The notes under the pieces: generated by a model
Seen by the model: the letters and a program-made list of their open reading frames with translations, nothing else
Told to the model about the DNA's origin: nothing
Database searches by the model: none
DNA from: Octopus bimaculoides
Taxonomy: Eukaryota
Length of the DNA: 64,000 nucleotides
Reading direction: 5' to 3'
NCBI RefSeq assembly: GCF_001194135.2
Contig: NC_068998.1
Span: forward strand, 16,912,661-16,976,660
Program-made: the position numbers and the translations under genes
Shown: positions 27,593 through 63,940 of the stretch, in pieces
Position numbering within the stretch: position 1 is the stretch's first letter
How the letters are laid out: each line of letters opens with the position of its first letter

Positions 27593-28424
27593 TTAGTGTG
27601 GTGGAGGCTCTCTATCAGAAGCTTTTGTAGCTTCTAAATGCTTGAGCATATACCTCTTAGCTGAACTTGTACTGACAAGAGGTTCTCTCAAACCAGTTGA
27701 TCTGGACTGAGCCTGAGATGTGGCGCTCCCCCCAACCATATTACCCACCCCTTGTCCCCCTGTATTTAACCCTCGCCCAATGTTGCTCCCCTGACCAGAA
27801 AGCAATACTAAATTGGCTTGTGTAAGTGAAGAACTCTGAGAAGTTGCAGAGATCGGACTTGTCCCTGATGCACTACGGGAAGCAGAATTAGAAGAAGCTG
27901 ACATCTGTTTGATCACTGTGATATTTTGAGTACCACCACCTGCAATATTGCTGCTTCCACAACTGGCCCCACTACTAGTAGCCCCACTGCTGCTGCAGCT
28001 ACCAGCACTTCCATTTCCTCCACTACTACAATTCGAGTTGCCACTGCTACCACTACCTTTCGGTTGATTGTGCAGGGAACTCTCTAGTGGTCTTTGACGG
28101 GTAGCTTTACTTTTCACTGTGGATTTCTGCAGACTAGTATCGTTGCTGCTACTACTGCTGCTGCTGCTCTCACCACTAACAGTACCGCCACTGGAATTGT
28201 CATTGCCACTCCTGCCGCCACTGCTACTGCCACTTCCACCCCCAATATTAGGTGCCTTTTCTTGAGGGTTCACCCCACTGCCAATCTCCAATTGTATCAT
28301 TTTTTCTAAGAATAATGGTTGTAGCTCGTCATCTAATGTTGATAGGAGAACTTCTTGAACGAACAAACTATGGTCCATTTCTAAAATGCTCTGATCTCCT
28401 TCTGACAATGCAAACTCCATACAT
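27593..28424 (-). CDS. KCMF1: KCMF1-like terminal coding exon with long Ser/Gly-rich low-complexity region
   Basis: Acceptor ttatctgcag|A TGT ATG; ORF 27593-28420; SLFVQEVLLSTL and REPPPH*. Confidence 0.93.
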
Positions 28425-31400: not shown

Positions 31401-32222
31401 AGATATTTTAAAATGTAATGACAAATCATCTTATGTCCATTTTTCTATGCTTGCATGGATTTGACTATATAATAATAAACAAGACTTGACAAACTATTAT
31501 GGTAGATTTGGAAAGAGAAGGGAAACTAAGAATTAAAAAAAGACAAAAGAAAAAGTAAAAACATCCAACCTCAGGAACTAAAAAAAAACAAAAAAAAACT
31601 GACTTTAAACAGGTAGAGTGTAATAGAATATAAGTAATGAGATCGCAAATGTATGTTTGAAATGGTCAAAACCAGCAGCACAATGTGCTCCAGTGCTTCA
31701 AATCTCTTGCTAAGCAGAGCTGATGAAAAGAGATTCTGATTAATTATCTGATACGTTTTGTTTTCTAATTGGAACTGATGTCCAACTAGGGGGTTACATA
31801 CCAAACGATAATAATGGAAAGTAAAAACTGGATATGTACATGCTGCAACTAAAAAAAAAAAAAAGCATGTAAAGGCAGAAGCAATTTTTTAACTGACTGG
31901 GGCAAAACTGAAATCTTCAGAATGAGAACATGTTTAGGTTATAAATACTAAAGGCAATACACCTATAAAATAACCAGTGTAGTCAAGACTAGAATATCAG
32001 TTAATATCATTTGCATGTTTAAAATACATAACTGTCATCTGCCATTTACATTTTCTCGTTGAGTACCATTTTAAAATGGTGAAATATTATATAATAAACC
32101 AGAAATATTTCTGAATGTATCTTCTGGATTCTTATTCTTCTTACCCATGTTATTCTATTATTTCATTTTAGTTAGAGAACTGATGAAATTGAAAATTTGT
32201 TATAAATCAAATTTTCGTTTTC

Positions 32223-32260
<38 letters not shown>

Positions 32261-35200
32261 AGTTTATTAGGTAGATATTTTAAAGAGCAGTGCATTTATT
32301 GCAGTTTACAATCATTTATAATGTATATCGGTATGTGTAAGGACTTTCGAGCGAGATTGTTGCCAGTGCCCCTGGACTGGCTCTTGTGTGGGTGGCACAT
32401 AAAATACACCATTTTGAGCGTGGCCGTTGCCAGTACCGCTTGACTGGGCCTCATGCTGATGGCACGTAAAAGCACCCACTACACTCTCAGAGTGGTTGGT
32501 GTTAGGAAGGGCATCCAGCTGTAGAAGCTCTGCCAAATCAGATTGGAGCCTGGTGTAGCCATCTGGTTTCACCAGTCCTCAGTCAAATCGTCCAACCCAT
32601 GCTAGCATGGAAAGCAGACGTTAAACGATGATGATGATGACTGAGATGAATAATTAGTTAAATTGATCCTAGTTAATACCAAGGACATACTTCAGAAGCC
32701 ATAGGAATGAAAGCAACATGGATCTCACAAAGAACTAAACACAGATGAAACTAATTACTGAAACCTGCTATACTACCATTTCAGCCACTTCACCAACCTC
32801 TGCTCCAATACAATGGATATTGAGCAAATATTATTTGTTCAAAAGCAGAACCGACACCAGAGATATATTTTTACTTAGTTTTTACAAAGATGTGGATAAC
32901 CACCATTATGTTGCTCTCCCTATGCTGATGACACATCCAAATAATTTAGGGGTCAATATATCACGGAAACCTAGAAGTCATGACTATGTTACCTACAATG
33001 CGATATGTGAAAACAATCCAAACTTTTCTACTTAAAATGGAAGTGTTGCTTTTAAAAAACAAACCAAGAAAAACCTCTAAAAGTAATTGACATCAGTTTT
33101 GAATAAACTATGGGATGATTAACAAAGAAAAATGTCTGAAAATATCCAAACCTGGGTAATAAAAATTGTGAATTGCTATTTGAAGTATTGGAGCTAGATG
33201 CACTTGGTGGTTCTGTGGAACTGTTTGGTGTAGTGGTAGTAGTAGTGACAGCTGGGGGCTTGGGAATTTCAGCTTGTCTTCTAGGTAATCGTTCTAATTG
33301 TTGTCTGGAAAAAAAAAAAAAAATGATATTTTAAGATTAAAAAGAAGACAGTGGTTGAGTTTTAAAATTTGTATACAAGCAGAAAATAAAATAAAATTAA
33401 CAAAAACATAATTGAAGCGAAAATAGCAATTATTATTTAACAGCCATTTGACATTTCCTCTTTTTTTTCTCTAAAGAGATAAATAAGAATTCCATCCTTA
33501 TGAACTTATAGCTATTCAAGGAGATTTGAAAATAATTATGAAATTCATTCTTAACTATCAGCTTTACTGTACCAACACAATTTGATTGAATTATTTCAAA
33601 TTTATAAACCAAATTTTTTGTTTAATCTAAAATTATTTTCACTTTTCTGAACTTATATTTAATATCAAAGTCTATAGAATAATTGAAAATCTGGCATTTA
33701 TCATGTTAATTATATTTGTTGCTTTCTAACACTATATCATTCTCTTAGAATCATGCTATTAATAATAAAATCTTGTTATTCTCAAATGAATAAAAAGTGA
33801 AATATTTCTTCTTAGATTGTTTATTGTAATAGGTTTTGATTGCCATAAAATCCAAAGCAAGCAAAATAAAGCAATTTCAAATATTTTAATGACTGTGTTA
33901 ATTATTAAAATAGTAAATTATTTGTAGATGGAAAAAAAAATTCTTAAAAAAACAAACAAAAAACAAAGTGACCCAGAGGAACATAAAATAAAATTTTAAA
34001 AAATATATAAAATTCAATATTTTTAGAGTTATTAAAAATAAATTTTAACTCCCGAAAGCCAAGCAAGCAACAGAAAGAACGAAGAAAACAAAATTTAAAA
34101 GACAATGCAGAAAGAAAAAAAAAAATCAGAGAGGGAAGATGAAACTAAATAGAAAGAAACAACAGATTTGAAATAATGTTCCATTAATGACATTCCAACA
34201 AAAGGCATAAACCCTACATGCCATGTTTAAGGTTTTCATTTGTACTGTTATGATGTGCTTTCCATTAGACACAATAATACATGTTGGTAACTTCATGTAT
34301 TCAACAAATGATTAATTTGGAATTAGTTTAATATTTGAAACATTTTAGACAAAGCACTATGGGATAAAATGAATCAAGAATGCAGGTCCCAGTGTTATTT
34401 CATTTGTTCACACTTATCTAAGGAATATCATCTTTTCATTCCATAAATTAATAATTCTTTTTCATACTATTAAAATATTTCATAACTACAAACAATAGTA
34501 TCTGAAATGTATGTAATACTAGATTGTACTTGAGAAAAGATAGAGACAATAGTTAAAATTTCTTTATAATACTAGTCTAACCTAACACAAATATAGATGC
34601 TATGAATGCCAGCAGTTCATGTTGAGATTAGTAGATCATGCAAACTAGAAATCCAAAATAAGTTGTTAGAAACACAGATCCAATTTAGCAGAAAAAAGCC
34701 AAAACATGCGGCAAAAATTAGCAAGTACATATCCATAAAATTAACATAATACAGTAAAAATACATGCCTTTAAGGAGAAAATTGTTGGGTGTGCGTGCGT
34801 GTTTATATTTGATTGCAAGAAACTTCCCTATTTTAAAGAATTTATTTAACTTTACACTTGTTTTTAGGTTGGATATTAGTTAACATTAGAATAATGAATT
34901 GAAGGAGAATTCCATTAATTTTAATGTAAAACAATTAGCATAAGTGGCACTACTATAATGATTAACAAACTTTTCCCAGAAGAATATAAGCTTCTGAAAT
35001 AAGAATGGTAATCAAAAATACCAAATATTGGCATAAGGATGTTTGTTCTACTCTAAGTCACTTAACTGCATAATTATTGGGAATAAATTACTTGTCTTTA
35101 AATTCACTCTGCATAAGAAAATAGAATAAATAAATGAATAAAAGCAGGCAGTCTTTATACTTAAACTAGTAGTATGCCCAACTTCACTTGTTTATGGAAG

Positions 35201-38200
35201 ACTAGCACACTTAAATCACACACAACCTTGCTTATGGTTTATTTCAGCTCTAGATACTAAGCAAAATAGGACCAGACCATAAACAAGACAGGTGATATAG
35301 ATATAGATATATGCAAATTGGTTTCATTCATAGTTTGGATGCATCAGGGAGGATGTGGGAGCTCATGTAAAGATTTCAACACCTTCAACTAAGGCGTATC
35401 ACTGATTACCCGTGGTCAGGTGCCAGCCAGGATTGAAACCGCGACCAAGATTGAAGTCCACCTGTCGACGACGCATTTACAGACTGCGTCGTAGTCATCA
35501 CACCATCGATCCGACTGAAATTAGAACAACCATAAGAGGGTATATTAGGTCCCCTTTTATGTAGGTTTCATCTAATTTATTATTAGTAGCTCCTGTCCAA
35601 CACTGGATGAAAGTCTCCTCCATATACAACAAATACTGATGCTGACTGAGCATGTTACTAACTAATTTCAAAAGGTTTTAACTGCCTACAAAAACATTAT
35701 TACAAACTATTCTTAGATTTTACAAAAGAATATCTAAAACAAAACCCTACAAAGTTAATGTCATTTAGTTCTATTGAAATTAACTAACCAAGTATAATAA
35801 CAGAGATTCTACACATTGAATAAACTGGAAATCAAAATGAAAAAAAAAAAAAAAAAATTAAGAAATACATAAGAAATGAACCAGTTATAGGAGTGGTGGA
35901 AAAATTATATAACCACAAAATACCAGCAAGCAGCTACAAACATGAACAACACTTGCAAACTGCCGTCTAAATATAGCTATTACTGCCTGTGTGTAGACAA
36001 CCCTATCTAAAATGAAATGATTGCAGTTTCCAAATTGCAATTCAACATGCTGTCAATTTGTTGGAGGAAATTCACATTCAATGATGATACATGTACTCTT
36101 AACATTTGCATTTTAATTATTTTAATTATATATTGAAACAAGTTAAAAATACATAATCATGCTTTTCAAACAACAGAATATTAACAAAAAGAAACAAAAA
36201 AAAAAAAACCTGTTAGTCTAAGTATTCTAAGTATTGGCTTTGATATAAAATAATTCAAAGTTTATAACATTTGGAAGATATATCCCTCTTCCAATTCTCT
36301 AACATCTAAGATTCCAATGTAGGCTCAATGATGGAATACAAACCATATATCAATTGTCCAGCAAGAAATATGAGGTTTGCATTTCATCAGTGGACATATG
36401 CCTCATTTTCAATTCAAGATTTATAAATTATTTCTCCTTTGCTAATGCAAGGATAGCTAGACAAACAGCAACTATAAGAAACTATAACATTAGGCAAGAC
36501 TGAGGAATAAGGGAGAAACCTTATTTAAAACTAAGAAACAAAAATTAGGTTGAAAGACTTACACAGAGAGAAGTGATACATGAAATAGTTACGGCTCTCA
36601 TATATTTGAACTAGAAAACTAATATACCCTCTCTATCTCTCTAACACAATGAATGGCAGGTTTTCAACAATAACTAGCCACATTTAAGCAACACGGGATG
36701 TCCTTGCATTTACCAAGGGGTTTTTCTGTCTGAGTTGGAAGAAAGACAATGGCTGTACACTGGAGAGACAAATGGATGAAGACATAGCCAAGAGTCAGCA
36801 ATACTGAACTCAAAAGGTCTAATGAAAGCCCAGTTCCATTTGTAGCTTTGCTGGATAGCCACTAACTCACTGATGAGTTCATTCAACCTTGTACAAAGGT
36901 ATTGCTGTCTTGTCAGGTTAGAGTATTAATTCACCCTCCACACATCAGGCTAAGATTTCACTGAGGCATTGCTAAGTTTCGTTGCCAACAACCTTATCAT
37001 GAACACAAACACACTCTTTCTCTCTCACATATATAGGTACTTATGTAATATTAGGGTTCCCTGAGGAGAATAAGGGAAGTATGAAGGCTATTAGAATCAG
37101 TCAAGAAATTCAAAACTCAGAAAAGTATGATGTTAATGAAACTAATAATAATTATTTCAAGTCACATGTCAAACAAGTCCAACTCTGCAATTATTTGTTA
37201 TATATATATATCAATAAATATAGGGATGATATTATTAAAATACCATCACGAGTGGTAAGCGAATTATCAGCCGTACAGGCAAATCAACAAAATATATACA
37301 TACAGTATTAGATATGTATATATGATCATCATCGTTTAACGTCCGCTTTCCATGCTAGCATGGGTTGGACGATTTGACTGAGGACTGGTGAAACTGGATG
37401 GCAACACCAGGCTCATATATATATATATATATATATACACAAGTGTACTACATGAGTACCTATATGGCTAAAAAATATAAGTCAAAATATACTTCGGTGG
37501 TACAGAAGTATTTTTGACTTCTATTTTTTAGTGATATAGGTACTCATGTAGTACCCTTGTGTATATAAGAGTTGGGCCAATCTTTTTTCATATTTTATGG
37601 ACCCATTAATTAGTGTTCAGATACCAATATAATGGAAAACAACTAGAGAAAAGTGAACCACCACATGGATGAATTTATGTGGAGTCAATTACATTGATGA
37701 TGTTAGGGTCATTTTATATTACTAGATTTTTAAGTGGTATCTTATAAACTAAATAAAGAAAAATTTGTGTTTACAACTAAAGATTTCTGTTAAACTTTCC
37801 TAGCTGAGTTTCATTTTCATTTCTAAGATTTCCACCCATGACTCTCCAATGTACCCCCACCCCACTAAAATGAAGTAGAATTAAACAGTCACTCAAAAGG
37901 TTCATAGATCTACAAAGTAAGATATTCAAAATTTAAATTAAATCAACTTTCCATGTTCAGCATAGAAGTAAAAGTCAATGACATACTAAAAACATGTAAG
38001 AGTTCATTTCATATATATATATAAAAAGAAAAAATTTGTCTATTCACTTATTTTCATATTGTAATCTATCCATCTAATTTATGTGGCATTTTCAAATATG
38101 ATAATGTTTTGTTCTAACTGTGCACATTTATACATTTCATAACTTATTTCTCTAAACTGCTTACTACACAATGAAAACACAAATGGCTGAGAGGGTTAGT

Positions 38201-38705
38201 ATTTCAAATCTTACCACCAGGAAAATAACCCTAAGTGGGGGACAGCTGCATGAATTTAGCTAAATCAGCTAGATGGTGAGGGTTTGAATGACATGCAGAA
38301 TAAATAATTGAGCCATACACTTATCTATAATTATTGTCAATTATTACTTAATATATATCCTTATGTAGTGATGTACTGAAGGCATAGTGAAAAATTTCCA
38401 AATGAATTGAAATTTTTTTTACATATGCCATACAATATATCACCACCAATCTGATTCGTAAAAAGTAATAACTAGTAATAATTGTATCTGACTCAATACT
38501 TGCAACATTTCACTTTATTTTAATATATGCTAAAGGGTTAAGTTGCTTTATGAGGAAATGAATGCCAAGGGAGACAAATATTTCAGGAGACGATTTCAGT
38601 GTTTTTTAAATGTTAGTCAAGGTGCACAAATAAGTTTGCATGGAAAGGTAGATTATACAACAAAAATATAACAAAATTATGAAAACAATTTTTTTTACAA
38701 TGGAG

Positions 38706-38740
<35 letters not shown>

Positions 38741-40977
38741 GTGTAATAATTATTTCATCAAGGTGTTCAATCACCTACATGTGTGTTAGGGAGGTGCAGA
38801 AAAAATTCTGCTCATTAAATATTGAAAGTAAAATTCTTAGTTCAAAGAAATATTTAATTTCCATTAAATACCAAGTAGTTATAACTTTCCTTACAATTCC
38901 TTTATACAGAACAAAAACCACATACCCACATTTCTTGACCTGAATAATATTTTAAAGATTTTCCTCGACTGTTTTTTTTTTGTTTTTTTTGAAGTCCAGA
39001 ACTTAGTCTATTGGTCTTTTTGCCAAACCCTTAAGTTGGGAACATAAACTAATACCAGTTGTCAAGTGGTACGGGGACAGACACAAACACACACAATAAA
39101 TATATGACAAGCTTCTTTCACTTTCCGTCTACCAAGTCCATTCACATGGCCTTGGTCTACCTGGGGCTATAGCAGAAAACACTTGCCCAAGTTGCCATGC
39201 AGTGGTATTGAACCTGAAACCATGATGTTGGGAAGTAAACTTCTAACCATACAGCCATACCTGTGCCTGGAATAAAATTTTTAAATCGTGGGATTTGCAG
39301 ATGTTCTTAGAGCAAGATTCTTCATTTGCCTAGAATACTAATGACCAATAAAGCATTACAGCTTAGTCCCACACACAAGCATAGCTAGAGTGTGTGCTGC
39401 TCTTCTGTTTGCCGCTTCCAGACTTCACAAAAGTGCAGCCCAGGGTTCCAATCTGATTTGGCTTGGTTTCTATGCTGGATGCCCTTCCTAGTGCTTTTAA
39501 CGTGCCACTGGCATGAGTGCTTTGTTTGATTGATTTTATTAGGGAATGGTTAATTTTTCATCAACTATGATGGAGTGATGAAACTGACCACAGCAGGAAA
39601 ATATACAAGATCATCATCGTTCCTGTTCCATGCTGGTATGGACTGGACAAGATCTTTAATACTTAGATTAAGGAGAATATTAAAATACTCTAAGATTTAA
39701 TAAACATAACCCAATAAAGAATTCTAAAAGATGTATTTTGTAACTGTTAAGATTGGCTCATAAGCTTGATTCCTATTGAATCACAAATATAAAAATTGTT
39801 TTAATGAGTAAATACTACACCAACCCTCACACTAGGTACTTACTTAGTAGACTGCAATTGCATTTCTAACTGCTGCAACTGGGAGGATACACTTTGGGCA
39901 GCAGCAGCCCGACTTCGAACGCTGGACAGCTGAGATAATAACTCTGTAATAAAAAAAAAAAAATAATAAATAAAGAGGTAAGAATCATAAGGGAAAACAG
40001 AAACATAAAAATCATTAGGACGACTTAAGAAAATAATAGTCTCTATTGCTAATTATTGACTAACACAAATAAGTGAGAGAAGCTTTGCTGAAGAGTAATA
40101 GGTTTAGAAAATTAAAAGTTATACTTAACCTGAATAATGAATATATGCAAACATAATATAAGATTGCAAACTTTATAGTTTTTTTTTTACAGTTTAAAAT
40201 ATTTAAATTAATTGGGGTGTTCTTATGTATTGGACAATATTAGTAAGCACTACCAAAATATGGGAAACCCAACGACAGATACAGCTTATATCATAAACCT
40301 GTGTAACAACTAATTTGAAAGCTAAGTGGCAAAGTTAAAGACAGGTAGAGGTTTATTTCAAGCAATTCGTTGGAGCAAACACCAAAAGCTAAGATAAACA
40401 GATGCATATGCTTGATTTTTTTCAACGTATTTTCAATTTAGTAAAAGATTTTTTTTTGTTTTTACGAAAAATATATAGATGAAGGAAAACTATTTAAATT
40501 TTAAAATTGTGTATTTTTGTCAAACACACACACAAAAAAACAAAAAAAAACAAACAAAAAAACAAACTGTCATGTGGCTTACAAAGATAACCTGTGGGAT
40601 AAAACTTTTTCATGGCAATAAAAAATTTATTGGTTTGTTATATTCTAAAATATGAAAGAGAAAAACAATGAAATAAAAAATTAAAAAATAAAACAACTAA
40701 ATACTTGAATATGTCAACTAAAAAGGAATTTTGCAATAGTACATTGATTGAATGACTACAAAGCACCACTTCTTACTGTTAATTGCAAGGAACTGAAGAA
40801 GTTATTAACAGCAAAAATGTGAAATCAAATATTAGAAAATTAGTATTCTAATAAAGCAGTGAACCCCAAAAAACTTAAGTTTTGCACCAAAGTCGGATAA
40901 GATGTCCACGGCATAAATTGTTGTTCATTTAGCATTTCTGAGTTGTTTTGGTCCCTGTTTGTATGTATTTGTGTGTA

Positions 40978-41034
<57 letters not shown>

Positions 41035-43551
41035 NNNNNNNNNNNNNNNNNNNNNNNNNNNNNNNNNNNNNNNNNNNNNNNNNNNNNNNNNNNNNNNNNN
41101 NNNNNNNNNNATATATATATATATATATATATATACACGCACACACACATATATATATACATACATACATATACATGTATATATTTTGGAATAAAGCCAC
41201 AGTTTTAATACAAAAAAAAAAATTCTTATAATATAGCAATTAGAATATTGAAAGAGAAAAATATTGCAGGCATTGTTAAAGGATTTAAGTTTGAAAATCA
41301 ATTTCAGTGTTACATGTATGTATTAAAAAAAAAAAAATACAAAATATAAACTTGAAACAAGCAAACTAAGATGCTTCCTCAACAAAAATTGTGACAAAAA
41401 CCTGAAGGAAAGATTACAGCAGCCCAAATTATTTGGATTATGGAATGAAACAATAATTCAGGATACAGTAGCACACCTAACTAGCAAGTAATGATACTTA
41501 CATCTGTACATTAACACATTAATGTAACCATGTAAAGCTACATTAAAGAAATCCTAATTTGGCAACACTGTTTCGAAGAAAAGGAGCAAAAAGAGATAGC
41601 AAAAAAACACCAAAAAGTCCATTTTAACCAGAGAAGACTTAATATTAGAACTACAAGAGCAACAACTACTTTTGACTGAGAAGGAAAAAAGGATAAAAAG
41701 AAACAAATAAATATGTTTAATAATAGATATAGAAGAATAGGTAAATATAGCAACCACAAGTAACTGACTTTATTCCAAGCATTTATGAGAGTTCTACACT
41801 GAGAAGGTCAAGTACTGTGTGCTAACGAAGGAAGGAAATTTAAGAAAATTTACCTGGAGAATATTCAAGGAAGACGTCCCAGAGGTCAGCTGCACACGAG
41901 ATGGGAAGTTGTGGTCGATTACGATCTATGGAAGGCAGGCACACACCCAATGAAGAAAAACGAAATAGCGCATGATAGAATATCATTTGAGGTAGCCCGT
42001 TCCGATAATAAAGTTATTTTGTCAAATTAACTTCCAATAGTTGATTTGGGGGATATAGAGAGCAGCTATTATTTAGAAAACTGGTTTTCAAAAAAGAAAT
42101 GAATTTATACCAAAATTTATGAAGCCATTTAAAAAAATCTTGCTTATGCCAGAACAGAAGACATCGTTTAAACAAACTTATTGCCACATTATAATAGTTT
42201 TCAATAAATCATTAACTCAAGACCAGTTTTCTATAATAAAAAGAGAGGGGTCAATTTAAAAAAAAAATTTTTTTTAATAATTATAAATAAATGAAATATA
42301 AAATGCAAATGAATTTTGTTTTAAATTTAAAACGAAAATTCATATTTATCTCCATGCACTGAGTGGCATGGATAACCAACTATCAAAGTGCATTTTATTA
42401 TTTTAGGTCAGGAGAAAAACAGTTGTAGATGAATGAAAGAAATTTATTAATTATAAAAGGATTTAATTTCATTAACCAGATCTCAGTATAGTTCAATTTT
42501 TACTTTAAAACCACACATACCATCTTCATTATCCTGGTTAAGGGACAGTTTGTTAAAGCTAGTGAGCTGATCATAAGAGTTTTCATTCAAACCCACTACT
42601 TTGGCAGACTAAACTTAGCAGTTGAAGGAAAAGAAAAGGTAAGGTTGAAACCAGGAACCTTACTGCTGCCAGGTCAATGCTTCATTACTGTATTTAATAC
42701 AAGAACTTCATACATACAAATACCTACTTTAAACTGAGTAGATGTTGACATATCAATCTAAGCTAACAGAGTCCTTATTAAAAAAAATACTGATCCTAAA
42801 ACCAAGAAGAAATGAACATCAAGGAAAATCTAGAAATTGATATTTCTTTTAGAGATGATTATGTAACTGTGACTAAAAAAGTTAGCTTTAGAAAAGTAAT
42901 AATTTTAAACAAATCTAGGTCATTAAATTGACAAGTTTTATAAGAAATTATAATTTTGATAACCATAACTTTTTCATGACTGATTTTTTTTTTTAAGGTA
43001 TTGATTTTATAGATAGTAAGTGAGGTCTCTCTTGTTTCACTAATCTGTTATAAAAAAAAAAAAAAAAACCCTTTTCTGTTATCTCTGGCTCACAATCTGC
43101 CACAAATGAACAATTCTTTCCTTTCACTCTTTCCTTCTCATATCACAAGCTCATCAAGGCTCATGGTATACTTGATACATCTAATTTTTAAACTACCTCC
43201 TTGACATATTGTTACAGGGGATATAATAATTATGATTAGATAGAGAATTTACTTGGAAGTGTCATTCAAATGAATAGGTAACAACAGAATAAAAAAAAAA
43301 AACCCAACCCCCTCATATAAAGAACAACTCCCAAGTTCAAGCTTTAATTTCTGCCAATAGTTTCAGCAATACTTAATACTACTTTTATGAAAAAATTGGC
43401 AAAGATCCTAAAATCTCAGCACAAAATCAGAGATAAGCATTATGAAAATTGGAGGTATATAGTCAATGTGATGTGGTTAGAACTTAAAATATAAAAACAG
43501 TCCTATATGTATACACCAGAATTTATGATTACAAATGAGCATTAAACTGAG

Positions 43552-55500: not shown

Positions 55501-58500
55501 AAATTACTTATTTTTACCAGGGTTGGACATTATCTACATTTCTAGGCAACCATTAAGAAAGTTGACTTTTTTTTAAAAAAAAATCAAACTTGGTATTTCA
55601 AATACACTGAGAATAATTTATTTAGCAAGTCAGATAATGGTAAAAGTATGAAGAGAGTAACTCCTAATATATAATAGCATATATCAGTTTCACAGCTGCA
55701 TCACTTTACCCACCCACCTAGAAGGGTAATATCTCTGAATAACAGTGTCCTTCTCTCACTAAATACTTCCATTTCCAGCACTGACAACATAAAATGCATT
55801 TGCGACACAAGCTGTCAAGGATAACCAGTATTCTCTATTAAAGTAAGATGAAAGACGACACGGACCACGATGACCTGTCCAACACATATCAGCATAGAGC
55901 ACTACTTAAATATAAAAACAAAACAAAACAAAAAAACTCATGTTCAGACTTCACCGTAGACACTGTTCTGACTTTGGCCAAGGTACATTTTTTCAAGATC
56001 AGTCTAACCAAAAATGGGGATCAATTTTCCACACACATAGCTGAGTGTTATTCATGCTAAGAAGGGCATTCAAGTGTAAAAGAGAAACCTCAACAAATCA
56101 TTCTAATGCTTACATTTAAAGAAATCTTTCTACTAAGAAAATGCATATTTTACTCTCAACTTCTGTGTGTCTACCCACATTTCAAGCAGTCTATTTTTTG
56201 ATCATTTTTAGGTGCTGTATTTCTATGTACATACGATTGACTAGAAAAAAGTATTTTTCTAACTTTTGTTTCTTACGTGAATTGTCAAAACACAGATCTA
56301 TGCAGAATGTGGTAGCTGGTTTTGAAACACTACATTAGAAATATTGGTTTTGAATTCAAAGTGTACATGTGTGTAAGTAAGGCATCTGAAGACTATCAGA
56401 AAATAAACTGCTTAAATGTAATGTAAACGCAGGCACAGAAGAGTTGGTTAAAGCAACACTACAAGCTACAACTCTCATATACAACCAATAAAAATGCATC
56501 TTGTCATCCTACCATCACAACTGTCTCATATCAAGACCTATGGCTTGCAGCAGCAGTAGAAGCAATCCAAAATTAATTCAATTCAAATCATGAAAGCAAC
56601 TGCTAAGACATGAAAATTGGTTCTAAGATGCAATTATGTTTGAAAATTTTATTAAGCATTAGATGCATAAAAATAAAAAATAAATCATGTACTTTTTCCC
56701 CAGAATACATTACAGCATTGCTAAAATTAGCATGTGTAGCAAAAATCTTCAGATTTGGTAAAGAAAGTATTGTAATTTGCTTTAAGCACTGCAGTAAGTG
56801 AAAATGTGATGTTTTTAAAACCTTTGAGCAATGCAGGCAAGAACTTCAAACATGTACAGTGATGTAAATGAATAAAAACAAAGATAGATATTGTATTACA
56901 GTGGTTGCTTAATAATTGTATCTTTTGGGATGAATTTCCCCTTTCAAACAAAAGAAAATAATCAGAGTTCAGAGAAATTTACTGCTATTGGTAAACTGTC
57001 TCAGACTGTGATGGTTTGTCAATAATAAATTTCTTCAAACTCATTACTTTCATTTTTTTAAATCTATTATTTGAAAAGGGGATTTATCCCCAAAATAACA
57101 ACCTATGCAATACAATACAATATCTTTATCTTTGTTTTCATTCACTGACATTACATCACCTTTTTACATATTTTAATTCTTCACCTTCATTCCTCAAAGG
57201 TTTTCTAAACATTTATCTCACAGAATTGCTAGTTTCAAACAAAAACGCACAGCATATAATAGATATATTACTAAAAACATGAAAACTAGATGGTCTTAAA
57301 TTTAATTCTTTAGTCTAATCAAAAGCTAACATGTATATCTTTAATATATATATAATTCAGAAAAGAAGCAAACAAAGCCATAAGTTTGCCACCTTAAAAG
57401 GTGAATGATAAAGATGATAGCGACTAACAAAAACACCAATTCTGACATTTCATGTAATAATTTCCAAATAGTGATTAGTATGTTATAGGTTATAAAATGT
57501 AAAGAATAACAAACAAAAATGTATAAGAGCATCTTAGTAGCGTTTTTCTTCATTTCTATGAAAAAATGTTTTGCCCCAATCTAGCTAATTCATGTTCATG
57601 ACATACATAGCCATATATTATAATAAATGCAACCAGGAGTATTCAGTTAGCTAGTGAAGCATTGAAAGTTGCAAAAGAAAAAGGTGGTATAGAGATATGT
57701 GTGGTATGAATTAGTAATAGAGTTAAGAACCAAAGCTCAAACTAAATTTAACTGCCACTCCAACTGAGAACTTGAAGAATTTGTCCAGTATAAGTAGAAA
57801 AAAAAAGTATCATATTACAGTTGATTATATAATCCAAATAAATAAAGCATACTAAGGATTACTATTTAAATGAAGCATACTATTAATTCTACTTTAAAAA
57901 GTAGATCCCTGAAGCTAAAGCTTAAAACTAAAATTAAAATTGACAAAAAATAAATTAAAAAACCCACTGCCTGAGAAGAAATGCTTTAGAAAACTAAGGT
58001 ATAATACAATAAATAATATACATTATAATATAACAAAAAAAAATTTAAACATTATAAAAACTGAATATGTTTAAAAAATAAATAACAATTAAAAAAATTA
58101 ATTATTGTTCTAATGGTTCTGAAGTAGTATCTCTCTTTTTATGTAAACTAAACTGTTAATGTATAATAATTATAACTGGGGAAACATTAAAAATTATGTC
58201 TAGACCTATGAAATCACTGATGCTAATAAACCTAGAAGTTTAATCATTTCTTGCTACAGTTAAATCAAAATTACATATTAGATTGATATATCATTATTTT
58301 CTATAACCAATATCTTCAAAATACAGAATGGAGATATTTTTTGAAAGCAGGCTAAATTTTTACTGGACCCAACAATACTGCATTTTTTTGAAAATTTATT
58401 TTAACTAGAGAAGAGTTTTAATAATTCACAGTACACACAAAAACAATCATATCTTTTGAAAATAATAAAATGTTAATTGAAAAACCAAAAAAAAAAAAAA

Positions 58501-61500
58501 GGTGAAGTAAAAGGAAAANNNNNNNNNNNNNNNNNNNNNNNNNNNNNNNNNNNNNNNNNNNNNNNNNNNNNNNNNNNNNNNNNNNNNNNNNNNNNNNNNN
58601 NNNNNNNNNNNNNNNNNNNNNNNNNNNNNNNNNNNNNNNNNNNNNNNNNNNNNNNNNNNNNNNNNNNNNNNNNNNNNNNNNNNNNNNNNNNATTCCACTT
58701 GACTCTTCGTAAGAAAAAAAGTTAAGGACAAATACATCCAAGAAGGAGTACAAGAAATATAACAAATTTTGGAGATGATATTTTCTTTTAAAAGAAAAAA
58801 ACCAGACATTTTAATAGTAGATGAACCTTAAGGTGGCAAGCTGGTAGAAATCTGCCTTTATGTTCTGAGTTCAAATTCTGCCAAAATGGACTTTGCCTTA
58901 AATCCCTTTGAGGTCAATAAAATAAGTACCAGCTGAACTGGGTCGATGTTAACTTACCCCCTCTCCAAAACTTGCTGACCGTGAGTCAAAATTTGAAACC
59001 AATATTAGATAAATCTCTTGTGCCACTGTTGGTGCATTTGATTACATTCCTGACAATAATGCATTTTCTGAAGAAATAATGGTTTATATTCTTAAGTAGT
59101 TTATGTATGATGATATAAACTTGTATTTTATCATGACATCAATGTGAGCAATGCAAGGAATGTGAATGAAGCAAATAGCAACAAAAAGCAATTAATACTT
59201 TATCAATGAAGGTTAACAATGCAGATGCCACAAGAGGGAAGTCAGTCAACGGCAGAAGACATTACAATAACAACCAAGAGACTCGAGATGGTTACCAAAC
59301 CTGCTATAAATAACATCTTTCTTTAGACCTACTGCCTTAAAAAAGGAAGGACACACTAGTTATGTGGTTGTGGATAAAATATGTTGAAAAAAGGAGAAAA
59401 AAATAGTTGCAATTGGACAGCATCTTTGATCATAGTTCTAACTGCCAGTAACACAAAATATAATCAACATCAGAACCAATGAGAGAGAAGGAGAGAGAGA
59501 GAGAGGGAGAGCTTTTATGCTGTCATTCAAATGGTTAAATATAGATGCTGAACTTACATTAAATCACCCTCTAAAAGCTTAAAAAGGAAAAAGAGATATT
59601 GGATAATGGAGTCCTAGCTACACACCGACACTGTTTGAAATAAAATTTAAGTTGGTACTGGCTGGCAAACTTTTCAATACAAGCCTGCTCAATCAAGAGT
59701 CAACATTAAATGCAATACACATCATTGTCATCAACATTTTTATGCTCATTTTATCATGCCGAGATTATTTGGTAAGATGTTCTTGTTGCCAACCATTACA
59801 TGTTTTTCAAGTAAGGTACTTTTTATTTCACTGGTCTTCTTGGCTGCAAGATTTTGTTTATGAAGGACCTAAATGCAAAGGTAAGACAATACAGGAAAAC
59901 AAACACTTGGACACACATACTGGTGCAGGCATGGTCACATGGTTACGAAATTTGCTTTGGAGCTACATGGACACTGTTGACTGGAGTCTTGTACTTTTCC
60001 TTTTTGAGAATTATCTGGTAGGTGGAAACTAAAAGAAACTCATTGTTTATATATATGTTAGATTTGGTGTTAGGAAGAGTAATCAGTCACAGAAACCACA
60101 CCAAAGCTAACATGGGAGCTTGTTGTAGTCTTGGAAAATGAACATTAAATGATAACGATGATAGTGTCTGAGGAATGGTTGAGGGTTAGTTTCCTGTTGT
60201 TCTGATATGGATGCATTAATTGTAAATGCAAGTTACCATCATCCAACCACTGAGCTGTTCACTGTTTGAAAGGACGAAGGGAAATATTACTTTACTTGGA
60301 AACTGGTGAGGGCTGGTAAGAGACAGAGCATCTAGCTTCAACAAAGTTTCATCTGGCTCATGCACCTCATCACTGCTAGTTTACTTCCAACTCCATAGCT
60401 ATGTAGCTCCTTTACAAGAAGCACCTGCTCTGCACCCACACCCCTATCTCTTAGTATAAAACTGTCCACACTTTCTGCTTCCATTGGGATTTGTAGTCTT
60501 GCAATCTGCATGGTAACAACACTAGTACTGGTGGCATGAAAAGAAGCCCAGTAAAGTGGTTGGAGTTAGGAAATGCAATCAGCTGTAGAAAGCATGCCAA
60601 AGCAGTACTTGGACCCCTAAGATCCTGTCAAATCATCAAACCCATGCTAGCAAGGAACATGAACAATAAATGATAATTATAGCTTTTAGTGGTGGCCTTA
60701 GTAGAGGTGGGCAAAAGCTGACATGAGGACACAAAAACAGACCAGTTTTGGTCTTCAACAAAACAGATGTACAGTATATAGAGAGCACCAAATCTGGGGA
60801 TGGCCTTAGTCATTTAACAAAGCTAACCTAGGCTGCACAATTGATAACTGATAGCAATTTAACCATTTGGCATTTAGACTGGCTCAGATATTGTACTTGT
60901 TTTATGTTCAAACTGGCCAGATCTGGCATCTCACAGTTACCCTACAATGTCATTCTAAAAATAAACAATCACATTACCAAAATCTCAAAGCTATAAGAAA
61001 TGCTACTTTGCAGCAGAGTTTGACAGTGACATTAGAATAAGGGGATAGGCATTATTAGCAAATTATTGCAATTAGAGTCAAGAATGGAGCTAACAAGTAG
61101 AGTAAACTAGAATCAGTATTGTTTGAAAGAAATTTAGTAAAGATTCTTTGCTAATAGGAGTGGACACGGGTCATAAAACTATGAATGTTTGAAGTTTATT
61201 ATGAATGGATGATAGACTGAGTGCCATCTAGCTGAGAATACTGAGTTTTTACTTTTAAAAAAAGTTTAAAAACTTATACAGAAAAAAACAAACAAAAAAA
61301 AAACAACCAAAACCAAAAATATCAGTTTTTGCAATAGCTGGACAATATGGAAAGGATATAAATTCTCTTGGTGTTCTGTGTTCTAATGTGAGGTGTGCAG
61401 CAAAGTCATCAGTTACATGGTTAGGATCCCCACCAGGCAATGCAGCACATATTGGACAAACCTTAAAAAGAGAATAATGACAATATTTACACACAAAATC

Positions 61501-62782
61501 TGAGCTATGTATTGTAAAGATATGTATAAAAGGCTAAAAATATTTTTTTTTAAATGGTGGTTCGCTGTTGATTAACATAACTCAAGATACCCTTAGGTTT
61601 TATGGAGCAACACTTATAATGCAATTATATCTATGTAAGTGAAATCCGGGTTTGTTAATGTCAACAATATAGTTTCTCTGAAAATGAGTACCATGAATAA
61701 AAAGATTTGCTTTGCAAAATTCTCAGAAAGTTCTTGCCAGGATTAGAAGGACTTTTAGGTTTGTACAATATTGAAGAAAATGTCAGGAGAAGATTTCTAT
61801 CAGTTTCATCACTTGCAGCATTTGCATGAGAACAGGTTGACAGAAGATTGTACCGAGTTTCAAAGCAGATAGCCTTCAGGATGTCCAACAATACGTACAT
61901 GCGACTGATCTGAAGAATTTCAATATAAATGTTGGACTGTTACAGAAGAAAATAAAATAAACTGTGTTGACTCAAGTCTTTTGTCAGGGAGCAATCAAGA
62001 AAAAAAAAAAAGTACTATATGCACTGTATAGAATACAGCAATATTATTTATATTTCTTACCTAATCCTCTTCTTATAGTAAAGATTTATTAAATATCTAT
62101 TTCTGTCTTGAAAGACATTCACACATAATTATCATAAAATACCAAGTATCAGAAACTATTTCTTTATAATTTATGATGAATTGTTGGAATACCTTTGTCA
62201 AATTTTGAAAAAATAATCTTAGAAAAAAAAAAAAAAAAAAAANNNNNNNNNNTTTGGTAAATTACCACATTAAAAAAATTTTTTTTTAGTTTGAATATAT
62301 TTTCATAAGCATCAAAAAGGCAAAAATATTTATTTTGTTGTAAATTTGGACATGAATTGTGGTGAAAATTTATTTTACAATAACCTGCATAACCTTACAA
62401 TACAGTAACTGTAAAAAGATTCAAACTCTTAATCTTGCAGTCTATAATCCCATGTCTTAATCACACAGTAGCTGTTTCTTTTATTAACATATGAAAAAAT
62501 AATATAGACAAAATATCAAACGAATAATTTTAGGCATATTAAAAATTGTTTCCGTGTTTTATAATAAGAAATACACAAATGAAAAAAAAAAAAAAAAAAG
62601 ATGTGGAAAATTATCACTCAATGAGAAACAGATTATACTAACTACTTCTGTAGAGGCGTCTGCATGCTCTGATGTGACATGCTCCTGTAAAGTTGCTTCT
62701 GTAAACCCCATTTTGCCACAATATGGACAAGTGAAAGACTGGGCCTGCTCGGCAGGCAATGCTTCTCCCCCATAATACAGTT
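27593..62782 (-). CDS. KCMF1: E3 ubiquitin-protein ligase KCMF1-like; 5'-partial (ZZ-finger exons outside window)
   Basis: Exons 62643-62782, 61360-61461, 58708 into N-gap, 39844-39943, 33152-33304 and 27593-28424. ELYYGGEA...SFTCPYCGKMGFTEATLQEHVTSEH, VCPICAALPGGDPNHVTDDFAAHLTLEHR, ELLSQLS, SQFLL, SLFVQEVLLSTL and terminal EPPP match human KCMF1 as recalled. Confidence 0.96.
32322..32641 (+). mobile_element. Second SINE-like retroposon family (family B) ending in ..gcatggaaagcagacgttaaac(GAT)n
   Basis: Related pieces at ~1545-1850(-), 2270-2321, 2625-2720(-), 4350-4612, 17205-17420(-), 21075-21185(-), 29190-29525, 37326-37414(-), 39410-39510(-), 54300-54450, 60530-60670. Confidence 0.8.
33152..33304 (-). 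CDS. KCMF1: KCMF1-like exon (QQLERLPRRQ...NSQFLLPR), phase 2 to 2
   Basis: Acceptor ttttttccag|A, donor AG|GTTTGG, 153 nt; not in ORF track. Confidence 0.9.
37432..37567. mobile_element. Palindromic miniature element with ~63-bp arms, TA-flanked
   Basis: Arms 37432-37495 and 37505-37567 are reverse complements with about 5 differences and a 9-nt loop. Confidence 0.7.
39844..39943 (-). CDS. KCMF1: KCMF1-like exon (ELLSQLSSVRSRAAAAQSVSSQLQQLEMQLQSTK), phase 1 to 2
   Basis: Acceptor tttttattacag|AG, donor AA|GTAAGT, 100 nt; not in ORF track; similar to human ELLSQLSGVRR...SQLQQLQMQLQ. Confidence 0.92.
41821..42030 (+). mobile_element. Remnant of LINE ORF2 C-terminus
   Basis: Reads ..IQGRRPRGQLHTRWEVVVDYDL..EIAHDRISF, resembling the GxRxRGRPxxRWxDxVxxDL..AxDR motif at the end of RTE-type RT ORFs. 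Confidence 0.6.
58519..58691. other. Assembly gap (173 N) covering most of a KCMF1 exon; other gaps at 1210-1222, 4630-4699, 8383-8481, 41035-41110, 62243-62252
   Basis: Runs of N; the other gaps abut microsatellites or homopolymers. Confidence 0.98.
58692..58708 (-). CDS. KCMF1: Visible start of KCMF1-like exon (EESSGI...); remainder lies in N-gap 58519-58691
   Basis: 17 coding nt GAAGAGTCAAGTGGAAT after the AC acceptor, then 173 N. Confidence 0.85.
58709..61359 (-). other. U12-type (minor spliceosome) AT-AC intron, 2651 nt
   Basis: 5' splice site ATATCCTTT (61359-61351), branch point TCCTTAAC (58728-58721), 3' end ...TTCTTAC| (AC at 58710-58709); joins REF|EESSG, matching human RDL|DESSG as recalled. 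Confidence 0.95.
58825..59005 (+). mobile_element. Third SINE family copy (head ggtggcaagctgg..gagttcaaattctgcc..aaataagtaccag), inside the U12 intron
   Basis: B-box-like GAGTTCAAATTC; related pieces at ~14920-14985, ~21925-21990 and ~5520-5610. Confidence 0.6.
61360..61461 (-). CDS. KCMF1: KCMF1-like exon (VCPICAALPGG...RTPREF), 102 nt, followed by a U12 donor
   Basis: Acceptor ctctttttaag|GTT; ends TTT|ATATCCTTT. Confidence 0.96.
62643..62782 (-). CDS. KCMF1: KCMF1-like exon with C2H2 finger (ELYYGGEA...STEV), 140 nt, phase 1 to 0
   Basis: Acceptor tatttcag|AA, donor GTA|GTTAGT. Confidence 0.96.
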
Positions 62783-63940
62783 CTGAAATATCAAGCAGGT
62801 ATACTTTAAAATACTGAAGTGAAAGTAATAAAATAAAAGACATTTAATTTAGATGTTATGCAAGCAATTCTAAAAATTTCCAATATATGTAAGGTAAACA
62901 AGATTACATATTAAATCAAAATTTCTTTTTATTTCAATTTTCAATGACTGTGCTGATGAGTAGATGATTAGGAATAAATTTATTTACAGATCAGTCAACA
63001 AAAAATTCTGACTGAATGAAACTTTCATGTGGATATGTAATGTGAATATGTCATACATGACAAACATTATAGATTCTATTGATTCATTGTTTAAAGATTA
63101 CATTTGTAGACAATACAAGTTTTAAGCACAGAGGAAATGTGATGTAATTTAAATTATTTAATTTCATTACTTCACCAAAGTGGTTGAATTAGTTAACACA
63201 ACTGTCGTGGTTGTTTCTACTCAACTTAGCACTGTAAAGTATGAAAACAACTGACAAGCACATTGTTGGCATCGACAATGGGTCAGATAATCTTTTTAAC
63301 TCCCACTGGCAACTATAATATTTACATTAAAATCTTAGAGGTTGATTATGAAATAAAAAAAAAACTAGCAGCAATACTCAACCACACTGAAATTTATAGA
63401 AACTATATGTAAGAGGGAGAGAGAGAGGAAAGTGAGTCACATAGTCAATGACTTCTTCACAGAAAGTTGCACCCCTAGACAAAACTGCAACTACCTAAAT
63501 GCAAAACAACTAGAAACATACATTGACCTTTATATATTAGGATGGTTTAAAATAGATTTCTTGCTAAAAAATATAAAAATTTTTTCAGTATTATATACAT
63601 TATGATACTGTAGAAACAGTAAAAAAAATCTAGTTCTTTCACAAGTCAGTTATCTTGTCTCTAAACAATAATGATTCCATTCAAATACATGCACACCTTT
63701 AGAAAAAGACAGGTAGGTATAGTTGAGTGGCTCAATTTATTTTGTAGAATAATAAAGTATAGAAAGCAAAGTTTATTTGGTTGGAATCTCAACCCTTTAA
63801 CCCCTCACACCAAACCTACAATGTCATTCTAAAAATAATCCTGTCATTGAAATCTTGAAGCTACAAGATAATGTATGGTTAATTCAAAACAATGTGAATA
63901 AATAAACATTACATTCAACGGTAATCTGAATGCTAAAAGG

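What the first reader, a model, noticed from the sequence alone, without database searches (positions are those of the whole stretch)
58709..61359. Minor-spliceosome AT-AC intron in KCMF1
Seen: the exon ending REF is followed not by GT but by ATATCCTTT. 2.65 kb downstream are TCCTTAAC, a 10-nt spacer, then AC| and in-frame EESSG. All three U12 signals are present and they restore the human-like junction (RDL|DESSG). Established: AT-AC ends with these motifs define U12 introns. Recalled, not checked: the fly orthologue CG11984 is among the few Drosophila genes with a U12 intron, which would make this a very old conserved intron. It has accumulated SINE and MITE insertions, and GT-AG-only gene predictors would probably mis-model it.
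Basis: partly seen in the sequence, partly recalled or inferred. Interest (0 to 1): 0.75.

Follow-up and report, generated by a model that had tools for sequence, protein, structure and literature searches.

The report
Known U12 intron in octopus KCMF1
The finding is a genuine AT-AC intron of the rare minor-spliceosome (U12) type in the Octopus bimaculoides KCMF1 gene, but it is the octopus copy of an intron already published as conserved between fly and human and already used in public octopus gene models, so it is correct but ordinary.

Summary
On the minus strand, a 102-nt KCMF1 exon (61461-61360, ...HRTPREF) is followed by ATATCCTTT. TCCTTAAC lies at 58728-58721, then a 10-nt spacer, AC at 58710-58709, and in-frame GAAGAGTCAAGTGGAAT (EESSG).

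The window is Octopus bimaculoides (GCA_001194135.2, CM046618.1; 0 mismatches over 37,408 nt). Octopus sinensis has the same intron with the same signals. Octopod mRNA contigs and RefSeq proteins, including O. bimaculoides XP_014783534.1, carry the REF|EESSG junction.

The same codon boundary is followed by ATATCCTT (read through as I-S-F) in mammals, fish, birds, a turtle, insects and molluscs. Lin et al. 2010 list fly CG11984/KCMF1 intron 3 and its human orthologue as AT-AC U12 introns.

Two caveats apply:
- Only 17 nt of the downstream exon are visible; the rest (about 143 nt) lies in a 173-N assembly gap. That gap, not the AT-AC ends, breaks the NCBI gene model in this species.
- A nested in-frame GT(-57)/AG(+6) pair exists and is used by one O. 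vulgaris model. It deletes 21 residues, including part of the zinc finger.

Minor-spliceosome dependence is inferred, not shown. Interest is low.

The parts
62643..62782 (-). Upstream KCMF1 exon (E)LYYGG...ADASTEV. It has an ordinary AG acceptor and a GT donor (GTTAGT). Boundaries are good to about +/-2 nt.
   Evidence: tblastn; mRNA-to-genome alignment; flanking bases.
61360..61461 (-). KCMF1 exon of 102 nt, VCPICAALPGGDPNHVTDDFAAHLTLEHRTPREF, covering the C-terminal half of the zf-Di19 zinc finger. It is preceded by ...ctttttaag (AG acceptor).
58709..61359 (-). The AT-AC U12-type intron: 2,651 nt, phase 0, no gap inside.
   Evidence: The orthologous 3,863-nt intron in O. sinensis is about 86% identical.
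61351..61359 (-). U12-type 5' splice site ATATCCTTT, which matches ATATCCTT at +1..+8.
   Evidence: Consensus taken from PMC2831892.
58721..58728 (-). Branch-point sequence TCCTTAAC, the only copy in the window on either strand. The second A (58722) lies 13 nt from the last intron base.
58709..58720 (-). 10-nt spacer TTTTTTTCTT followed by the terminal AC (58710-58709).
   Evidence: O. sinensis has a 9-nt spacer plus AC.
58692..58708 (-). Visible first 17 nt of the downstream exon, GAAGAGTCAAGTGGAAT (EESSG + AT).
   Evidence: Identical to the first 17 nt of the O. sinensis exon.
58519..58691 (.). Assembly gap of 173 N that hides the remaining ~143 nt of the downstream exon (...MRHVRR...MDPIA), its GT donor and some intron sequence.
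   Evidence: mRNA bases 815-972 find no match in the window.
61415..61416 (-). Cryptic in-frame U2-type donor, cat|GTAACT (7/9 match to MAG|GTRAGT), 57 nt upstream of the U12 donor. The GT is the Val codon of HVTDD.
   Evidence: Used in O. vulgaris model CAI9736164.1 (...GGDPNH|SSGMRHV).
58703..58704 (-). Cryptic AG acceptor 6 nt inside the downstream exon (the exon would then start at 58702, TCAAGTGG = SSG).
60888..61002 (.). Dispersed short repeat inside the intron, with 6 other copies in the window at 77-89% identity.

Best explanation
This is the Octopus bimaculoides orthologue of the conserved AT-AC, U12-type (minor-spliceosome) intron of KCMF1. It sits in phase 0, five codons after the zf-Di19 zinc finger.

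The mechanism below is inferred from established knowledge of U12 splicing. U11 snRNA pairs with the 5' site /AUAUCCUUU, and U12 snRNA pairs with UCCUUAAC, bulging a branch adenosine about 13 nt from the 3' end. U4atac/U6atac.U5 then join, and U6atac replaces U11 at the 5' site. The intron is removed between ...GAAUUU and GAAGAG..., giving ...HRTPREF-EESSGMRHVRR....

Shown here:
- the motifs and their exact placement;
- their conservation in a second octopus genome;
- the spliced junction in octopod mRNA contigs and in RefSeq proteins;
- the ATATCCTT signature at the same codon boundary across bilaterians.

Not shown here:
- reads from O. bimaculoides itself;
- dependence on the minor spliceosome.
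For: Motifs and coordinates.

Species: the window is identical to GCA_001194135.2 CM046618.1 over 37,408 nt.

Second genome: the O. sinensis orthologous intron reads ATATCCTTTT...TGTCCTTAAC-9nt-AC|GAAGAGTCAAGTGGAATGAGG, in an intron that is otherwise 86% identical with large indels.

Transcripts: two octopod mRNA contigs (L006, L007) join GAATTC|GAGGAACCAAGTGGG.

Proteins with REF|EESSG: XP_029645831-4 (O. sinensis), the O. vulgaris CAI97361xx models, Argonauta hians, and O. bimaculoides XP_014783534.1.

Other phyla: a bivalve-like genomic contig (L001) has TTC|ATATCCTTT...TTCCTTAAT-7nt-AC|GATGAA, and Blattella has CTG|ATATCCTTC. 29 proteins read through as I-S-[FSL], and 74 carry the joined junction.

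Literature: PMC2831892 Table 2 lists CG11984/KCMF1 as AT-AC U12 in fly and U12 in human, and PMC2952598 agrees. PMC10639083 reports that molluscs are relatively rich in minor introns and includes O. sinensis.

Contrast within the gene: every other KCMF1 intron end visible in the window is consistent with GT-AG (boundaries good to a few nt).
Against: No RNA-seq reads from O. bimaculoides were inspected. The RefSeq models imply the junction, but their supporting evidence is not visible to me.

Only 17 nt of the downstream exon exist in this assembly.

One deposited O. vulgaris protein (CAI9736164.1) uses a nested GT-AG pair instead.

In Drosophila the Kcmf1 U12 intron was still partly spliced when U12/U6atac were disrupted (PMC7644725), so dependence on the minor spliceosome may not be absolute.

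U11, U12, U4atac and U6atac genes of octopus were not examined.
Confidence: 0.95

Rival explanations
1. The region is spliced mainly by the major spliceosome at the nested in-frame GT-AG pair (donor cat|GTAACT at 61416, acceptor ...gaagAG| giving an exon start at 58702). The AT-AC motifs would then be a relic.
For: The pair exists, is in frame, and the donor matches 7/9 of MAG|GTRAGT. O. vulgaris protein CAI9736164.1 (P0123) reads ...GGDPNH|SSGMRHV, exactly that junction.
Against: This junction removes 21 residues (VTDDFAAHLTLEHRTPREFEE), including the HLTLEH end of the zf-Di19 finger. Those residues are conserved from human to octopus.

74 of the proteins retrieved, both octopod mRNA contigs and all other octopus isoforms keep these residues.

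The GT is simply the Val codon. The U12 motifs are perfectly conserved between two octopus species, while the neighbouring intron sequence diverges from +10 onward.

The model could come from a GT-AG-only predictor. A low-level cryptic isoform is not excluded; I put that at about 0.1.
Confidence: 0.03
2. It is an AT-AC intron removed by the major (U2-type) spliceosome, like the rare U2-type AT-AC introns.
For: The terminal dinucleotides alone do not define the class (PMC7367187). Fly Kcmf1 was partly spliced without U12/U6atac (PMC7644725).
Against: The 5' site is a 9/9 match to ATATCCTTT and the branch site an 8/8 match to TCCTTAAC at U12-typical spacing. From my own knowledge, U2-type AT-AC introns have U2-like 5' sites (ATAAGT-like) and lack this branch motif. 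The orthologous fly and human introns are classed as U12.
Confidence: 0.02
3. The apparent junction is an artefact of a fragmented assembly, because the gap abuts the 17-nt exon stub.
For: A 173-N gap starts 17 nt into the downstream exon.
Against: The intron itself is gap-free. It is colinear with an independent gap-free O. sinensis assembly in which the full 160-nt exon follows the same TCCTTAAC...AC. The size of the hidden exon part (~143 nt) fits the 173-N gap.
Confidence: 0.01

Closest known systems
Drosophila melanogaster CG11984 (Kcmf1) intron 3 and the orthologous human KCMF1 intron (Lin et al. 2010, PMC2831892 Table 2; Pessa et al. 2010, PMC2952598)
   Same: Same gene, same AT-AC subtype, U12 class. 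Mammalian and insect sequences show ATATCCTT immediately after the homologous ...R(D/E)(L/F) codon, so the position is the same.
   Different: Different species and length (2.65 kb here). The insect sequences seen here carry a second ATATCC motif 12 nt downstream (ISFLISF read-through), which octopus lacks. I did not read the fly or human genomic sequence itself; position equivalence rests on Lin et al. plus the bat, rodent and cockroach read-throughs.
Orthologous KCMF1 intron of Octopus sinensis (GCA_006345805.1 CM016873.1; RefSeq XP_029645831.1)
   Same: Identical ATATCCTTT, TGTCCTTAAC, AC and flanking exons. The introns are about 86% identical.
   Different: It is 3,863 nt against 2,651 nt, with about 1 kb and about 0.24 kb of extra sequence in O. 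sinensis. The spacer is 9 nt against 10 nt. The downstream exon is fully assembled there.
Canonical AT-AC U12-type introns in general (Hall and Padgett class; consensus ATATCCTT / TCCTTAAC / AC as summarised in PMC2831892)
   Same: All three sequence signals match the consensus perfectly, and the branch site lies close to the 3' end.
   Different: Nothing in the sequence differs. Only the functional test is missing.
U2-type AT-AC introns (rare major-spliceosome introns with AT-AC ends)
   Same: The terminal dinucleotides.
   Different: Those lack the extended ATATCCTT 5' site and the TCCTTAAC branch site (my own knowledge). Both are present here.

Membership tests
U12-type (minor-spliceosome) intron, AT-AC subtype | Extended 5' splice site ATATCCTT at +1..+8 | tested here: met
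   61359-61352 is ATATCCTT, and +9 is T. Consensus from PMC2831892.
U12-type (minor-spliceosome) intron, AT-AC subtype | Branch-point sequence TCCTTAAC | tested here: met
   58728-58721, an exact match and the only copy in 128 kb of both strands.
U12-type (minor-spliceosome) intron, AT-AC subtype | Short branch-site-to-3'-end distance (about 10-20 nt, optimum about 11-13; my own knowledge) | tested here: met
   The second A of TCCTTAAC (58722) is 13 nt from the last intron base, 58709. L001 has a 7-nt spacer and O. sinensis a 9-nt spacer.
U12-type (minor-spliceosome) intron, AT-AC subtype | AC at the 3' end, restoring the reading frame | tested here: met
   AC at 58710-58709. The phase-0 junction REF|EESSG matches orthologues.
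U12-type (minor-spliceosome) intron, AT-AC subtype | The junction is actually used in mRNA | tested here: inconclusive
   It is met in a related octopod (mRNA contigs L006/L007). It is implied by RefSeq proteins of O. bimaculoides, O. sinensis, O. vulgaris and Argonauta. No O. bimaculoides reads were examined directly.
U12-type (minor-spliceosome) intron, AT-AC subtype | Excision depends on U11, U12, U4atac and U6atac snRNPs | not testable with these tools
   This needs snRNA knock-down or blocking, or in vitro splicing. The presence of a minor spliceosome in octopus is taken from PMC10639083 and was not checked here.
Orthologue of the conserved KCMF1 U12 intron (fly CG11984 intron 3 / human KCMF1) | The host gene is KCMF1 | tested here: met
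   zf-Di19, E 6e-22. The best named hits are KCMF1 of Octopus and other molluscs, with 83% identity to the human sequence over exons A and B.
Orthologue of the conserved KCMF1 U12 intron (fly CG11984 intron 3 / human KCMF1) | Same position and phase in the protein alignment as the catalogued U12 intron | tested here: met
   29 proteins from mammals, birds, a turtle, fish, insects and molluscs read I-S-[FSL] (ATATCCTTx) straight after the homologous R(D/E)(L/F) codon. DNA confirms this for L001, L002 and L003; in L005 the perfect ATATCCTTT lies 12 nt downstream. Lin et al. list one U12 intron in KCMF1. The fly and human genomic DNA was not read here.

The most novel reading that the evidence does not exclude
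The most novel reading not excluded is that octopods splice this region in two ways. The minor spliceosome would use the AT-AC sites. The major spliceosome would use the nested in-frame GT(-57)/AG(+6) pair, giving a KCMF1 isoform that lacks 21 residues and the end of the zf-Di19 finger, as in O. vulgaris CAI9736164.1. The balance between the two spliceosomes would then tune KCMF1 activity.
Probability: 0.08. Interest if true: 0.35.

Novelty: already known. Interest (0 to 1): 0.12.

Why it matters
Scientifically it matters little. It adds a cephalopod data point to an intron already known to be conserved between insects and vertebrates. It also fits a published survey that found molluscs relatively rich in minor introns.

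The practical value lies in annotation.

- The current O. bimaculoides KCMF1 model (XP_052830500.1) lacks the true exon after this intron, because that exon lies in a 173-N gap. The model carries apparently spurious sequence in its place.
- The older entries for the C-terminal half are named 'hornerin-like' and 'cell wall protein RBR3-like'.
- Many deposited KCMF1 models in other animals read into, or skip around, this AT-AC intron.

The I-S-F read-through is a cheap diagnostic for such errors.

Tried and rejected
Look-ups that returned nothing:
- Exact-protein look-ups found no record for Nucella P0005, Myotis P0003, O. vulgaris P0122 and the window's last-exon ORF. I therefore could not read a mammalian or gastropod genomic 3' end.
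- The Blattella locus (L002) shows the 5' site, but the downstream exon is not within the 10-kb flank.
- L003 and L005 end shortly after the 5' site.

Scans of the window that were empty or weak:
- Rfam at gathering thresholds and ARAGORN found nothing, so neither an intronic RNA gene nor a tRNA-derived SINE head could be confirmed.
- The inverted-repeat search of the intron gave only two long-range, weakly complementary pairs, none bracketing a short element.
- The plus-strand ORF inside the intron (59652-60032) has no Pfam match, so I dropped the idea of a nested gene.

Ideas considered and rejected:
- I tested whether the true acceptor lies near 39944, where ELLSQL... resumes, which would make the 17-nt stub spurious. 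Octopus sinensis shows a separate 160-nt exon directly after the AC, and another GT-AG intron before ELLSQL.
- I did not compute an intronIC or SpliceRack score, because the matrices are not available offline.

Full report
**What is in the sequence.** The feature is on the minus strand.

- A 102-nt exon, 61461-61360, is preceded by ...ctttttaag. It encodes VCPICAALPGGDPNHVTDDFAAHLTLEHRTPREF.
- The next bases, 61359-61351, are ATATCCTTT, not GT.
- At the other end, TCCTTAAC lies at 58728-58721. It is followed by the spacer TTTTTTTCTT (58720-58711) and AC (58710-58709).
- From 58708 the sequence reads GAA GAG TCA AGT GGA AT, which is EESSG.
- The intron is 2,651 nt, phase 0, and contains no N.

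One point was missed. The downstream exon is cut off after 17 nt by a run of 173 N (58691-58519), so 'EESSG' is all that this assembly shows.

**Is it more than chance?** ATATCCTT occurs 6 times on both strands of the window, against 3.8 expected. TCCTTAAC occurs once, against 2.4 expected. Neither motif is enriched, but each sits exactly at a boundary of protein homology, with AC in between and the frame preserved. My rough joint probability from those frequencies is below 1e-7 (inference).

I also listed every GT and AG near the boundaries.
- No GT lies between -57 and +16 of the exon end. The downstream GTs are poor donors (3-4 of 9 matches to MAG|GTRAGT).
- The only acceptor-side AGs close by are +4, +6 and +11, inside the exon.
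- A GT-AG intron therefore cannot reproduce the conserved junction.
- The single in-frame GT-AG combination is the donor cat|GTAACT at -57 with the AG at +6. It would remove 21 residues.

**Gene and organism.** The joined exons carry a zf-Di19 zinc finger (Pfam E 6e-22). They are 83% identical to human KCMF1 over 86 residues.

A longer query retrieved KCMF1 of Octopus vulgaris, O. sinensis and Argonauta hians. It also retrieved an O. bimaculoides protein with 100% identity.

The locus of O. bimaculoides XP_052830500.1 (GCA_001194135.2, CM046618.1: 16,939,253-16,998,002) is identical to the window over all 37,408 overlapping bases, including the 173-N gap. The window is therefore Octopus bimaculoides. 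The KCMF1 gene runs from beyond the window's right end down to about 27593.

**Evidence that the junction is real.**

1. In an independent, gap-free assembly of O. sinensis (L009), the orthologous intron is 3,863 nt. It starts TTT|ATATCCTTTT and ends TGTCCTTAAC-TTTTTTCTT-AC|GAAGAGTCAAGTGGAATGAGGCATGTA. The exon that follows encodes EESSGMRHVRR...MDPIA and ends at a GT donor. The two introns are about 86% identical, with roughly 1 kb and 0.24 kb of extra sequence in O. sinensis. The splice signals are unchanged, whereas differences begin at +10 of the intron.
2. Two mRNA contigs from another octopod (L006 and L007, 88-94% identical to the window's exons) join ...GAATTC|GAGGAACCAAGTGGG. Their bases 815-972 have no counterpart in the window. 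That is the exon hidden in the gap.
3. RefSeq and ENA proteins of O. sinensis, O. vulgaris and Argonauta read ...HRTPREF|EESSGMRHVRR. O. bimaculoides XP_014783534.1 reads ...REF|EESSG| before diverging at the gap. NCBI's pipeline therefore already used this AT-AC junction in this genome.

**Age and orthology.** Lin et al. 2010 (PMC2831892, Table 2) list fly CG11984/KCMF1 intron 3 of 6 as AT-AC U12, with a U12 orthologue of the same subtype in human. Pessa et al. 2010 list CG11984 among the fly's U12-intron genes.

To tie the octopus position to these, I tabulated what follows the homologous ...HR..R(D/E)(L/F) codon in the 245 proteins retrieved.
- 74 proteins continue with the next exon (DE..G.RHVRR).
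- 29 proteins read I-S-[F/S/L], which is ATA TCC TTx, the U12 5' site translated in frame.
- The 29 include bat, rodents, whale, turtle, duck, fishes, the gastropod Nucella, the cockroach Blattella and many insect-like contigs.
- DNA confirms the motif in a bivalve-like contig (L001: TTC|ATATCCTTT...TTCCTTAAT-7 nt-AC|GATGAA), in Blattella (CTG|ATATCCTTC), and in contig L003. In L005 the first motif is degenerate and the perfect ATATCCTTT lies 12 nt downstream.

**Mechanism.** By established knowledge of the minor spliceosome:
- U11 recognises /AUAUCCUUU, and U12 pairs with UCCUUAAC and bulges the branch adenosine. That adenosine lies about 13 nt from the 3' end here, within the short distance typical of U12 introns.
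- U4atac/U6atac.U5 then join, and U6atac replaces U11 at the 5' site.

This part is inference. Nothing here tests snRNA dependence. In flies the Kcmf1 U12 intron was still partly spliced when U12/U6atac were disrupted (PMC7644725). Larue and Roy 2023 (PMC10639083) report relative minor-intron enrichment in molluscs and include O. sinensis, so a working minor spliceosome in octopus is expected.

**Rivals.** The nested GT(-57)/AG(+6) pair is used by one O. vulgaris model, CAI9736164.1 (...GGDPNH|SSGMRHV). It deletes VTDDFAAHLTLEHRTPREFEE, including the HLTLEH end of the zinc finger. Its GT is merely the Val codon. No other model or transcript lacks these residues. I read it as a predictor artefact or, at most, a minor cryptic isoform.

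A U2-type AT-AC intron is unlikely given the perfect U12 5' and branch motifs. An assembly artefact is excluded by the O. sinensis colinearity.

**The mis-modelling claim.** It is correct in general. Deposited KCMF1 models fail here in several ways:
- Chelonia, Apodemus, Aix, Scleropages and Balaenoptera read through ISF and then splice elsewhere.
- Galeopterus and Cebus skip the next exon.
- Myotis and Nucella models terminate in the intron.
- The Blattella model also terminates in the intron, and a separate gene is called about 1.5 kb downstream; it may be the C-terminal half, which I did not check.

In O. bimaculoides itself, the cause of the broken model is the gap rather than the AT-AC ends:
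- The 2015-era entries split the gene into an N-terminal 'KCMF1-like' piece and C-terminal pieces named 'hornerin-like' and 'cell wall protein RBR3-like'.
- The current 606-aa model bridges the missing exon with a 10-nt micro-exon and sequence from 55905-55762 and 42013-41825. The first of these has no counterpart in O. sinensis proteins.

**The SINE and MITE remark.** A segment of about 100-115 nt (60888-61002) is a dispersed repeat with 6 other copies in the window. The tRNA-like stretch near 58830-58960 has no second copy here and no ARAGORN or Rfam hit. Only two long-range, weakly complementary inverted-repeat pairs were found, none bracketing a short element. The remark is partly confirmed and is not important to the conclusion.

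**Verdict.** It is a textbook AT-AC U12 intron. It is orthologous to one already published for fly and human, already used in public octopus gene models, and in a phylum already surveyed for minor introns. Novelty: already known. Interest: low. The main useful by-product is the set of annotation errors listed below.

Noticed in passing
window 58519-58691 (gap); 55762-55905; 41825-42013: The exon after the U12 intron (about 160 nt, EESSGMRHVRR...MDPIA in O. sinensis) is almost wholly inside a 173-N gap, which persists in GCA_001194135.2. The current RefSeq model XP_052830500.1 replaces it with a 10-nt micro-exon plus 'IVLYADMCWTGHRGPC...' (55905-55762) and an over-extended exon at 42013-41825. 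The first has no counterpart in O. sinensis proteins and no Pfam match.
   Followed up: yes
window 27593-39944 (C-terminal exons): Older O. bimaculoides entries for the C-terminal half of KCMF1 (UniProt A0A0L8G6T3 and A0A0L8G6T0; XP_014783537.1 and XP_014783536.1) are named 'hornerin-like' and 'cell wall protein RBR3-like'. They lack the ZZ and zf-Di19 exons and consist mostly of the Ser/Gly-rich tail.
   Followed up: yes
window 61415-61416 and 58703-58704; O. vulgaris protein P0123 (CAI9736164.1): One O. vulgaris model uses a nested in-frame GT-AG pair (-57/+6) around the U12 sites, deleting 21 residues that include the end of the zinc finger. Whether it is a real cryptic isoform or a predictor artefact is unresolved.
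   Followed up: partly
L002 12918-12940 (Blattella germanica); L005 4413-4436; proteins P0004, P0008-P0011, P0015-P0022, P0043: Insect sequences carry two ATATCC-like motifs 12 nt apart, in frame (read-through I-S-F-L-I-S-F). In L005 the first is degenerate (ATTTCTTT) and the second is perfect (ATATCCTTT). Protein P0026 reads RDL-ISFL-EEPVSS, as if the second site were the donor used. This suggests a tandem or shifted U12 5' splice site in insects.
   Followed up: partly
L004 5008-5319 (ENA ERZ25070167 contig): An unidentified eukaryote has no intron at this position (...RAPRDFDEPMSGIRHVRR is continuous). It keeps the flanking introns (cag|GT... upstream, GCAG|GTAAC after MDPIA). This looks like a precise loss of the U12 intron.
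   Followed up: partly
protein P0115 (48 aa, ENA contig): Its read-through after ...RAPREF is V-S-F rather than I-S-F, which would be GTATCCTTT. That is a possible AT-AC to GT-AG subtype switch of the same U12 intron. The DNA was not read because the look-ups were exhausted.
   Followed up: no
L001 898-1140 (Logan SRR29726839, bivalve-like): This species keeps the U12 intron (581 nt) but has lost the next, U2-type intron. MDPIA and ELLSQL are continuous there, whereas octopus, human-like contigs and L004 have an intron after MDPIA.
   Followed up: partly
window about 41854-41925 and 35406-35514: Two cassette exons distinguish octopus KCMF1 isoforms: DRNRPQLPISCAADLWDVFLEYSP, and NRIDGVMTTTQSVNASSTGGLQSWSRFQSWLAPDHG. 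Both are present in the window. The coordinates are approximate.
   Followed up: partly
window 60888-61002, with copies at 6445-6517, 17682-17783, 17904-18014, 18437-18536, 22054-22105, 63804-63873: A short dispersed repeat family of about 100-115 nt at 77-89% identity. Three copies cluster at 17.7-18.5 kb. It was not classified.
   Followed up: partly
window 4630-4699 and 41035-41110 (gaps) and flanks: Two of the window's other assembly gaps are flanked by (CA)n/(TG)n microsatellites, seen as THTHTH/CVCVCV ORF translations. The short-read assembly probably broke at simple repeats.
   Followed up: no
proteins P0170, P0176, P0186, P0198, P0226, P0235, P0240 (turtle, colugo, capuchin, duck, arowana, mouse, whale): Deposited vertebrate KCMF1 models mis-handle this same intron, by ISF read-through followed by odd joins, or by skipping the next exon. 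The I-S-F tripeptide after ...RAPRDL is a simple flag for the error.
   Followed up: yes
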